A DNA stretch of 62,751 nucleotides, counting the filler, from Sminthopsis crassicaudata (lineage: Eukaryota), in the NCBI RefSeq assembly GCF_048593235.1. It is 3 parts of 3 records of this genome, joined end to end, with 100 filler letters (N's around TTAATTAATTAA, not from the genome) between each part and the next. Parts side by side here need not be neighbours in the genome. Positions count along the whole stretch, not along the records: positions 1 to 30,706 come from NC_133619.1; 2 more parts are not named here. The stretch is one strand, 5' to 3'. The translations under genes and the position numbers were made by a program. The notes beneath the pieces were generated by a model. It made no database searches and was not told where the DNA came from. It was given only the letters and a program-made list of their open reading frames with translations. The stretch's first letter is position 1, and the number at the start of each line of letters is the position of its first letter. Positions 2,955 through 3,995 of this stretch are shown here, in pieces.

Positions 2955-3115
2955 GGGACAACCTTCAGACCGCCATTACAGTTGCAAAAAATTCTGAAAT
3001 GATTCCTCAAGGTAATAAGGTGATTCTTATTGAGGCCAATGAACCCGAAGGACACTCTCCTGCATCTGTGACCTGGCAGCTGTTGGAGAACAAAGAGGAG
3101 GGGCACAAGGATAAG
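2955..3115 (+). CDS. ATP13A5: ATP13A5 coding exon
   Basis: ccAG acceptor 2953-2954. (G)DNLQTAITVAKNSEMIPQGNKVILIEANEPEGHSPASVTWQLLENKEEGHKDK. Weak donor AAG|GTACAA at 3116 gives phase 0 into the next exon and the same length as the recalled human segment. Confidence 0.9.
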
Positions 3116-3995
3116 GTACAAAGAGGAAGGGCACGGGAACAAGGGATAAAGAGGAAGGGCATGGGAACAAGGGACAAAGAGGAAGAGCATGGGAACAAGG
3201 GACAAAGAGGAAGAGCATAGGGATAAGGGACAAAGAGGAAGGGCACGGGAACAAGGGACAAAGAGGAAGGGCACGGGGACAAGGGATAAAGAGGAAAGGC
3301 ATGGGAACAAGGGACAAAGAGGAAGAGCATGGGAACAAGGGACAAAGAGGAAGAGCATAGGGATAAGGGACAAAGAGGAAGGGCACGGGAACAAGGGACA
3401 AAGAGGAAGGGCACGGGAACAAGGGACAAAGAGGAAGGGCACGGGGACAAGGGATAAAGAGGAAGGGCATGGGAACAAGGGACAAAGAGGAAGAGCATGG
3501 GAACAAGGGACAAAGAGGAAGAGCATAGGGATAAGGGACAAAGAGGAAGAGCATGGGAACAACAGACAAAGAGGAAGAGCACGGGGATAAGGGACAAAGA
3601 GGAAAGGCATGGGGACAAGGTACAAAGAGGAAGGGCATGGGGACAAGGTACAAAGAGGAAGGGCATGGGACAAGGGACAAAGAGGAAGGGCACGGGGACA
3701 AGGGACAAAGAGGAAGGGCACGGGGACAAGGGACAAAGAAGAAGGAAATGGGGATAAGGGACAAAAAGGAAGGACACGGGGATAAGGGACAAAGAAGAAG
3801 GAAATGGGGATAAGGGACAAAGAGGAAGGACACGGGGACAAGGGACAAAGAAGAAGGAAATGGGGATAAGGGACAAAAAGGAAGGACACGGGGATAAGGG
3901 ACAAAGAAGAAGGAAATGGGGATAAGGGACAAAGAGGAAGGACACGGGGACAAGGGACAAAGAAGAAGGAAATGGGAATAAGGGACAGAGGAGGG
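3090..3995 (+). repeat. 28-bp purine-rich minisatellite, ~32 copies
   Basis: Unit ~ACAAAGAGGAAGGGCACGGGAACAAGGG; three units give the 28-aa period seen in the spurious ORFs. Confidence 0.97.

What the first reader, a model, noticed from the sequence alone, without database searches (positions are those of the whole stretch)
3090..3995. Minisatellite born from an ATP13A5 exon end and splice donor, carrying two decoy donors
Seen: unit 1 of the 28-bp array (3090-3117, ACAAAGAGGAGGGGCACAAGGATAAGGT) is the last 26 nt of the coding exon (NKEEGHKDK) plus the GT of its donor. About 31 more copies run into the intron. Almost all have GG in place of the GT (AAGGGAC). Two adjacent mid-array copies keep AAG|GTACAA, identical in core to the weak true donor: 3619|3620 (exactly 18 x 28 = 504 nt downstream, in frame) and 3647|3648 (out of frame). 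An in-frame TAG at 3218-3220 means either decoy gives a truncated or NMD-sensitive mRNA. Known: GAAG/GAGGA-rich motifs, which fill the array, are typical SR-protein enhancer motifs. Inference: this may be a length- and sequence-variable splice switch that tunes productive ATP13A5 mRNA, and the GT-to-GG change may reflect selection against donor multiplication.
Basis: partly seen in the sequence, partly recalled or inferred. Interest (0 to 1): 0.7.

Follow-up and report, generated by a model that had tools for sequence, protein, structure and literature searches.

The report
Exon-end minisatellite in dunnart ATP13A5 intron
A 28-bp tandem repeat in an intron of the fat-tailed dunnart ATP13A5 gene did arise by copying the last 26 bases of the exon plus its splice signal, which is a known kind of arrangement also seen in human F7, CBS and IFI6, and nothing here shows that it regulates splicing.

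Summary
There are 32 units of 28 bp at 3090-3984. Unit 1 is the last 26 nt of a coding exon plus the donor GT. Only three GT dinucleotides occur in the array (3116, 3620, 3648), and all three share the 9-mer AAGGTACAA. The in-frame TAG at 3218 is real.

The window is Sminthopsis crassicaudata ATP13A5. The annotated proteins and all orthologues support the junction 3115 to 4426.

New here: a decayed 33rd copy (3985-4008) closes the array. It encodes EEGHRNK, the exon-end form kept in koala and tammar. It is followed by AC where the GT should be. Next comes a stretch that translates RLSESL, matching the intron read-through in the glider and possum gene models. So the array lies between a live copy and a dead copy of the exon end, which supports the proposed origin.

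The "splice switch" idea is untested. Precedent argues against it: in F7 only the most upstream site is used, and in IFI6 and CBS only the two nearest pseudo-sites are also used. Here the two sites lie 504 and 532 nt away. Shared descent from one GG-bearing unit explains the GG copies without invoking selection.

Verdict: a new member of a known kind, of modest interest.

The parts
2955..3115 (+). ATP13A5 coding exon (residues 721-774 of the dunnart protein P0149), ending in phase 0 with ...NKEEGHKDK
   Evidence: tblastn of P0149 at 100% identity; translation; match to P5-ATPase family TIGR01657; exon end in the same place in all mammalian orthologues
3090..3117 (+). Unit 1 of the array: last 26 nt of the exon plus the authentic donor GT (3116-3117). 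The donor 9-mer AAG|GTACAA is weak.
   Evidence: among the weakest of the 11 donors scored in the window by an approximate PWM and by U1 duplex energy
3118..3984 (+). Units 2-32 of the 28-bp minisatellite. It is intronic and 86% purine on the + strand, and it shows higher-order repeats of 5-6 units (first part) and 2/4 units (last part).
3218..3220 (+). First in-frame stop (TAG) when the exon is read into the array
3620..3621 (+). Pseudo-donor GT of unit 19, 504 nt downstream of the authentic site, in frame; would make a 665-nt exon
3648..3649 (+). Pseudo-donor GT of unit 20, 532 nt downstream, out of frame; would make a 693-nt exon
3985..4010 (+). Decayed terminal copy of the exon end. 3988-4008 translates EEGHRNK, and AC at 4009-4010 stands where the GT should be (dead ancestral donor).
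   Evidence: it is the only unit besides unit 1 with G at unit position 11
4011..4029 (+). Start of the ancestral intron. From 4006 it reads K-T-RLSESL, matching K-V-RLSESL (Petaurus) and K-V-RMSESL (Trichosurus), where those gene models read into the intron.
   Evidence: RLSESL occurs once in the six-frame translation of the window
4426..4551 (+). Next ATP13A5 coding exon (EICLHIQDP...NLLPK), the acceptor for the authentic junction

Best explanation
This is an intronic minisatellite that began as a tandem duplication of exactly the last 26 nt of an ATP13A5 exon plus the GT of its donor. It then grew to about 33 copies by multi-unit duplications. The first copy is still the working exon end. 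Its GT is now followed by copied exon sequence (ACAAAG...) instead of the old intron, which leaves a weak donor. The last copy adjoins the old intron and has lost its GT (now AC). The inner copies descend from a unit in which GT had become GG. Two adjacent inner copies carry GT, either from one back-mutation that was then duplicated or from retention of the original GT. The spliceosome most likely uses the first, most upstream site. It is paired with an acceptor 161 nt upstream, which is a normal exon size. The two identical sites 504 and 532 nt further on are probably silent or rarely used pseudo-sites. Any use of them would give a premature stop and probably mRNA decay. The array is most likely a neutral by-product, not a regulator. 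Shown: the anatomy, the origin and the authentic junction. Inferred: that the pseudo-sites are silent and the array is neutral.
For: Array anatomy. The window is S. crassicaudata ATP13A5, with 12 exons at 83-100% identity to P0149 by tblastn, 8 of them at 100%. Both annotated isoforms recovered read KDK|EIC across the junction. The exon end has the same length (VTWQL plus 11 residues) in eutherians, marsupials and platypus, so the exon end predates the array. The terminal copy encodes EEGHRNK, and the following RLSESL matches the possum and glider intron read-through and is unique in the window. Higher-order periodicity shows that the inner units are copies of copies. No truncated read-through isoform appeared among the top hits of two protein searches that would have admitted one by length. 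Precedent: the F7 IVS7 minisatellite uses only the most upstream of identical donors, and more distant pseudo-sites give way to exon skipping; LMNB2 and PDGF use only the authentic site; IFI6 and CBS add only the two nearest pseudo-sites (PMC1557585).
Against: No RNA reads could be laid, so the claim that the pseudo-sites are silent rests on precedent and annotation only. The authentic donor is weak. The array is rich in GAR-type motifs, and SR proteins bound in a downstream intron tend to repress an upstream donor and favour a downstream one (PMC5397162). That would favour the two inner GT sites. No orthologous DNA was available, so the age of the array and the ancestral donor sequence are inferred from proteins only.
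Confidence: 0.72

Rival explanations
1. The array is a splice switch: SR-type enhancer motifs drive some splicing to the two inner GT sites, giving NMD-sensitive transcripts, and array length or GT-copy number tunes productive ATP13A5 mRNA.
For: Three identical 9-mer donors. The 40 nt downstream of the 3620 site are 36/40 identical to those of the authentic site. The authentic donor is weak. There are 34 GAAG and 25 GAGGA motifs. SR proteins act in a position-dependent way that favours downstream donors (PMC5397162). In IFI6 and CBS some pseudo-sites are used.
Against: In IFI6 and CBS only the two nearest pseudo-sites are used, and in F7, LMNB2 and PDGF none are used. Use falls with distance. 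Here the sites would make exons of 665 and 693 nt. Both annotated isoforms recovered use 3115>4426. No conservation or polymorphism data exist.
Confidence: 0.07
2. The array acts as an intronic enhancer that compensates for the weak donor it created. Its many G-runs (first GGG at +14) recruit hnRNP F/H-type factors and support use of the upstream site.
For: 72 runs of three or more G in the array, against 12 in the rest of the intron. G-runs are described as intronic splicing enhancers (abstract of 10.1101/2024.10.07.617118). The donor is weak by PWM and U1 pairing.
Against: The same units are also rich in GAR motifs, which are expected to act the other way from an intron. There is no functional or comparative test. 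One or two units would be enough, so this does not explain 32.
Confidence: 0.12
3. The two inner GT copies, or the copy number, are assembly or consensus errors in a repeat that is hard to assemble.
For: The two GT units are adjacent and sit next to the only 27-bp unit, which is a local irregularity. No reads could be checked.
Against: The array has a clean register with 0% indels by TRF and orderly higher-order repeats. A G>T error at the same unit position in two neighbouring units is an unlikely random error.
Confidence: 0.07

Closest known systems
Human F7 intron 7 37-bp VNTR minisatellite (Borensztajn et al. 2006, PMC1557585)
   Same: The first monomer spans the exon-intron boundary, so the donor is reiterated in the intron. 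The authentic site is the most upstream one. Pseudo-site use would disturb the reading frame.
   Different: In F7 only 4 nt of the exon lie in the unit, there are 5-9 copies, and every copy keeps the donor. Here 26 nt of the exon lie in the unit, there are about 33 copies, and only 2 of 31 downstream copies keep GT, starting 504 nt away.
Human CBS exon 13/intron 13 31-bp VNTR (cited in PMC1557585; also PMC2630376)
   Same: A minisatellite of 15-20 units at the exon/intron border, with reiterated donors.
   Different: [quoted passage not shown] Here the proximal copies have no GT at all.
Human IFI6 (6-16) intron 2 minisatellite (Turri et al. 1995, cited in PMC1557585)
   Same: A long array (25 pseudo-sites) that begins at a splice donor.
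   Different: In IFI6 the two nearest pseudo-sites are used constitutively and give protein isoforms. Here any pseudo-site use meets a stop codon.
Human LMNB2 (100-bp) and PDGF intron 4 (81-bp) boundary minisatellites (cited in PMC1557585)
   Same: Boundary-spanning arrays in which only the authentic donor is used, which is the outcome expected here.
   Different: Their units are longer, and their pseudo-sites are retained in the copies.

Membership tests
Minisatellite whose first monomer spans an exon-intron boundary (F7 / CBS / IFI6 type) | Head-to-tail array of units 10-100 bp long | tested here: met
   Period 28, 32.1 copies, 88% matches; register table
Minisatellite whose first monomer spans an exon-intron boundary (F7 / CBS / IFI6 type) | The first monomer contains the exon end and the authentic donor | tested here: met
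   Unit 1 is 26 nt of exon plus GT; the exon boundary is fixed by P0149 and by orthologues
Minisatellite whose first monomer spans an exon-intron boundary (F7 / CBS / IFI6 type) | The donor sequence is reiterated in downstream monomers (pseudo-sites) | tested here: inconclusive
   Only units 19 and 20 keep GT; 28 units have GG, one has AG, and the terminal copy has AC. Met in part.
Minisatellite whose first monomer spans an exon-intron boundary (F7 / CBS / IFI6 type) | The most upstream site is the one used in mRNA | tested here: inconclusive
   Annotated proteins and orthology support 3115>4426. No reads were laid.
Minisatellite whose first monomer spans an exon-intron boundary (F7 / CBS / IFI6 type) | Copy number varies between individuals (VNTR) | not testable with these tools
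Candidate DNA runs X1-X4 were found but not examined.
P5B-type ATPase ATP13A5 | Exons encode the ATP13A5 orthologue rather than ATP13A4 | tested here: met
   12 exons at 83-100% identity to S. crassicaudata ATP13A5 isoform X2, 8 of them at 100%. Motifs AKNSEMIP, VTWQL and EIC match ATP13A5, not the ATP13A4 form ARKSGMVSE. TIGR01657 match.
Regulated unproductive splicing (alternative splicing coupled to NMD) | The alternative junction is seen in RNA and is stabilised when NMD is blocked | not testable with these tools
   No RNA evidence was obtainable. Only the premature stop that such junctions would carry is shown.

The most novel reading that the evidence does not exclude
The array is a polymorphic rheostat. 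Copy number and the number of GT-bearing inner units set how much ATP13A5 pre-mRNA is diverted to NMD-bound transcripts. Unequal exchange between unit 1 and GT-bearing inner units also rewrites the last nine codons of the exon. The Tasmanian devil exon end HGSK resembles the array's HG(N/D)K more than it resembles the dunnart's own HKDK.
Probability: 0.06. Interest if true: 0.55.

Novelty: new member of a known kind. Interest (0 to 1): 0.3.

Why it matters
Boundary-spanning minisatellites have served as natural experiments on how the spliceosome chooses among identical donors. This marsupial case adds a variant in which nearly all copies have lost the GT. Two identical sites survive half a kilobase away, behind a weak authentic donor. 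Both ends of the founding duplication can still be read: a live copy at the exon and a dead copy at the old intron. If dunnart RNA-seq showed use of the distant sites, that would test how far the 'most upstream site wins' rule reaches. Otherwise this is an ordinary intronic repeat with a clear origin. ATP13A5 itself is of interest as a marker of brain pericytes in mouse (PMC11502228), but nothing here links the repeat to that role.

Tried and rejected
So there is no junction evidence and no polymorphism evidence.
(3) The search of earlier findings was not open.
(4) A protein search with the exon plus its read-through (2957-3217) was meant to find dasyurid ORF fragments that would reveal an array in relatives. 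It returned only eutherian fragments.
(5) A scan of metagenome contigs for a degenerate two-unit pattern found nothing.
(6) The large representative search with the 53-aa exon returned mostly eutherian fragments. These were useful only for showing the conserved exon end and the V-S-K-C read-through.
(7) MaxEntScan and SpliceAI are not available.
(8) Canonical G-quadruplex motifs (loops of 7 or less) are absent; only long-loop forms occur.
Rejected idea: that the exon end was overwritten by an older intronic array. The exon-end length and sequence type are conserved across mammals.

Full report
**What is there.** Tandem Repeats Finder gives one strong array at 3090-3987: period 28, 32.1 copies, 88% matches, no indels. 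Read in register it has 32 units, all 28 bp except unit 21, which is 27 bp. The unit occurs nowhere else in the 30.7-kb piece. The array is 86% purine on the + strand. It holds 72 G-runs of three or more, 34 GAAG and 25 GAGGA. Identity between units peaks at lags of 5-6 units (about 92.5%) in 3118-3649 and at lags of 2 and 4 units (94-96%) in 3677-3984. So the array grew by copying blocks of units, as minisatellites usually do.

**The gene and the exon.**
- The stretch 2957-3115 translates to DNLQTAITVAKNSEMIP...VTWQLLENKEEGHKDK, and 4426-4551 translates to EICLHIQDP...NLLPK. Both match the P5-ATPase model TIGR01657.
- Protein searches identify the window as Sminthopsis crassicaudata ATP13A5. 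Isoforms X2 and X3 (P0149, P0145) read ...HKDKEICLH... across the junction.
- tblastn of P0149 places 12 exons in the window, 8 of them at 100% identity.
- The exon end lies at the same place in eutherians, marsupials and platypus: VTWQL plus 11 residues, followed by E-I/T/M.
- The authentic junction is therefore 3115|3116 to 4425|4426, and the exon-end sequence is older than the array.

- Unit 1 is the last 26 nt of the exon plus GT.
- The only GT dinucleotides in the array are at 3116, 3620 and 3648, each within AAG|GTACAA.
- 3619 is 504 nt (in frame) and 3647 is 532 nt (out of frame) past 3115.
- Reading on from the exon meets stops at 3218, 3224, 3287 and 3455.
- The 40 nt after the 3620 site are 36/40 identical to those after the authentic site.

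**New evidence on the origin.**
- After unit 32 comes a decayed copy at 3985-4010. It aligns at least as well to unit 1 (20 of 26 positions) as to any of the three inner units compared (17-18 of 26). It is also the only other copy with G at unit position 11.
- Its 3' part (3988-4008) translates EEGHRNK. HRNK is the exon end of koala and tammar, whereas the living dunnart exon now reads HKDK.
- Where its GT should stand there is AC (4009-4010), which is two transitions away from GT.
- The next bases read, in the same frame, T-RLSESL. The glider and brushtail possum gene models extend past this exon end into the intron and read V-RLSESL and V-RMSESL there. RLSESL occurs only once in the six-frame translation of the window.
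- So the right edge of the array is a fossil of the old exon end, still attached to the old intron start, with its donor dead. The left edge is the living copy.
- This fits a founding duplication of exactly 26 nt of exon plus GT.
- One consequence is that positions +3 onward of the working donor are now copied exon sequence (ACAAAG...). Eutherian fragments read V-S-K-C after the exon end, which is consistent with a GTAAGT-type donor there. That donor sequence is inferred from back-translation, not seen as DNA.

**Donor strength.** The two inner sites score the same by construction. Two GT sites inside the exon (3012, 3020) score higher.

**Comparison with what is known.** This is a described class. 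Borensztajn et al. [quoted passage not shown]
- In F7, LMNB2 and PDGF only the authentic, most upstream site is used.
- In IFI6 and CBS the two nearest pseudo-sites are also used.
- In F7 minigenes the pseudo-sites work only when the upstream ones are destroyed. The farther away the first usable one is, the more exon skipping replaces it.

**How this precedent applies here.**
- The 17 nearest copies have no GT.
- The two pseudo-sites would make exons of 665 and 693 nt.
- Both annotated isoforms recovered use the authentic site.
- No truncated read-through isoform appeared in searches that would have admitted one by length.
- Against this, SR proteins bound downstream of a donor tend to repress it and to help a donor further on (PMC5397162), and the array is full of such motifs. 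G-runs, in turn, are described as intronic enhancers.

The net effect cannot be predicted from sequence. I put silent or rarely used pseudo-sites at about 0.7 and a real switch at about 0.07.

**On selection.** The GG units are copies of copies, so they count as about one T>G event. That event could have been fixed in the array by drift during its expansion. The terminal copy lost its GT independently. At its overall divergence (6 of 26 positions), losing both bases by chance has a probability near 5%, which is suggestive at most. Human F7, CBS and IFI6 keep all their pseudo-sites, so strong selection against reiterated donors is not a general rule. Units 19 and 20 differ from each other at one position and share all derived states of the inner units. 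Their T is equally well explained as one back-mutation followed by a unit duplication or as a retained ancestral T. The data do not decide between these.

**A side observation.** The devil exon end (HGSK) resembles the array's common HG(N/D)K more than the dunnart's HKDK. This raises the untested possibility that unequal exchange with the array can rewrite the last codons of the exon.

**Limits.**
- So there is no read-level evidence for splice junctions, polymorphism or assembly accuracy, and no orthologous DNA.

**Verdict.** The functional claim is untested and unlikely by precedent. This is a new member of a known kind, of modest interest.

Noticed in passing
window 3012 and 3020: Two GT sites inside the coding exon (AAG|GTAATA and AAG|GTGATT, in the codons for QGNKVI) score higher than the authentic donor by the approximate PWM and by U1 pairing. 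They are evidently not used in the annotated protein.
   Followed up: partly
proteins P0163 (Trichosurus) and P0164 (Petaurus), after ...KNK / ...RNK: These two gene models carry 11 extra residues (VRMSESLVYCK, VRLSESLVLSK) that are a read-through of the intron start to a second donor 33 nt downstream. Koala and tammar models do not have them.
   Followed up: partly
window 18853-19481: Three copies of a 207-bp tandem repeat (93% matches) in a downstream ATP13A5 intron; not at an exon boundary.
   Followed up: no
window 21767-22046: Degenerate tandem array with period 27 (also 109) in an intron, 66-77% matches.
   Followed up: no
The tool says the filter also trips by chance. Nothing else was done with them.
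   Followed up: no
window 1571: The donor of the exon 1440-1571 could not be placed cleanly from the tblastn end. The best nearby GT (TGA|GTGACC) scores very low, so the exact boundary was left unresolved.
   Followed up: no
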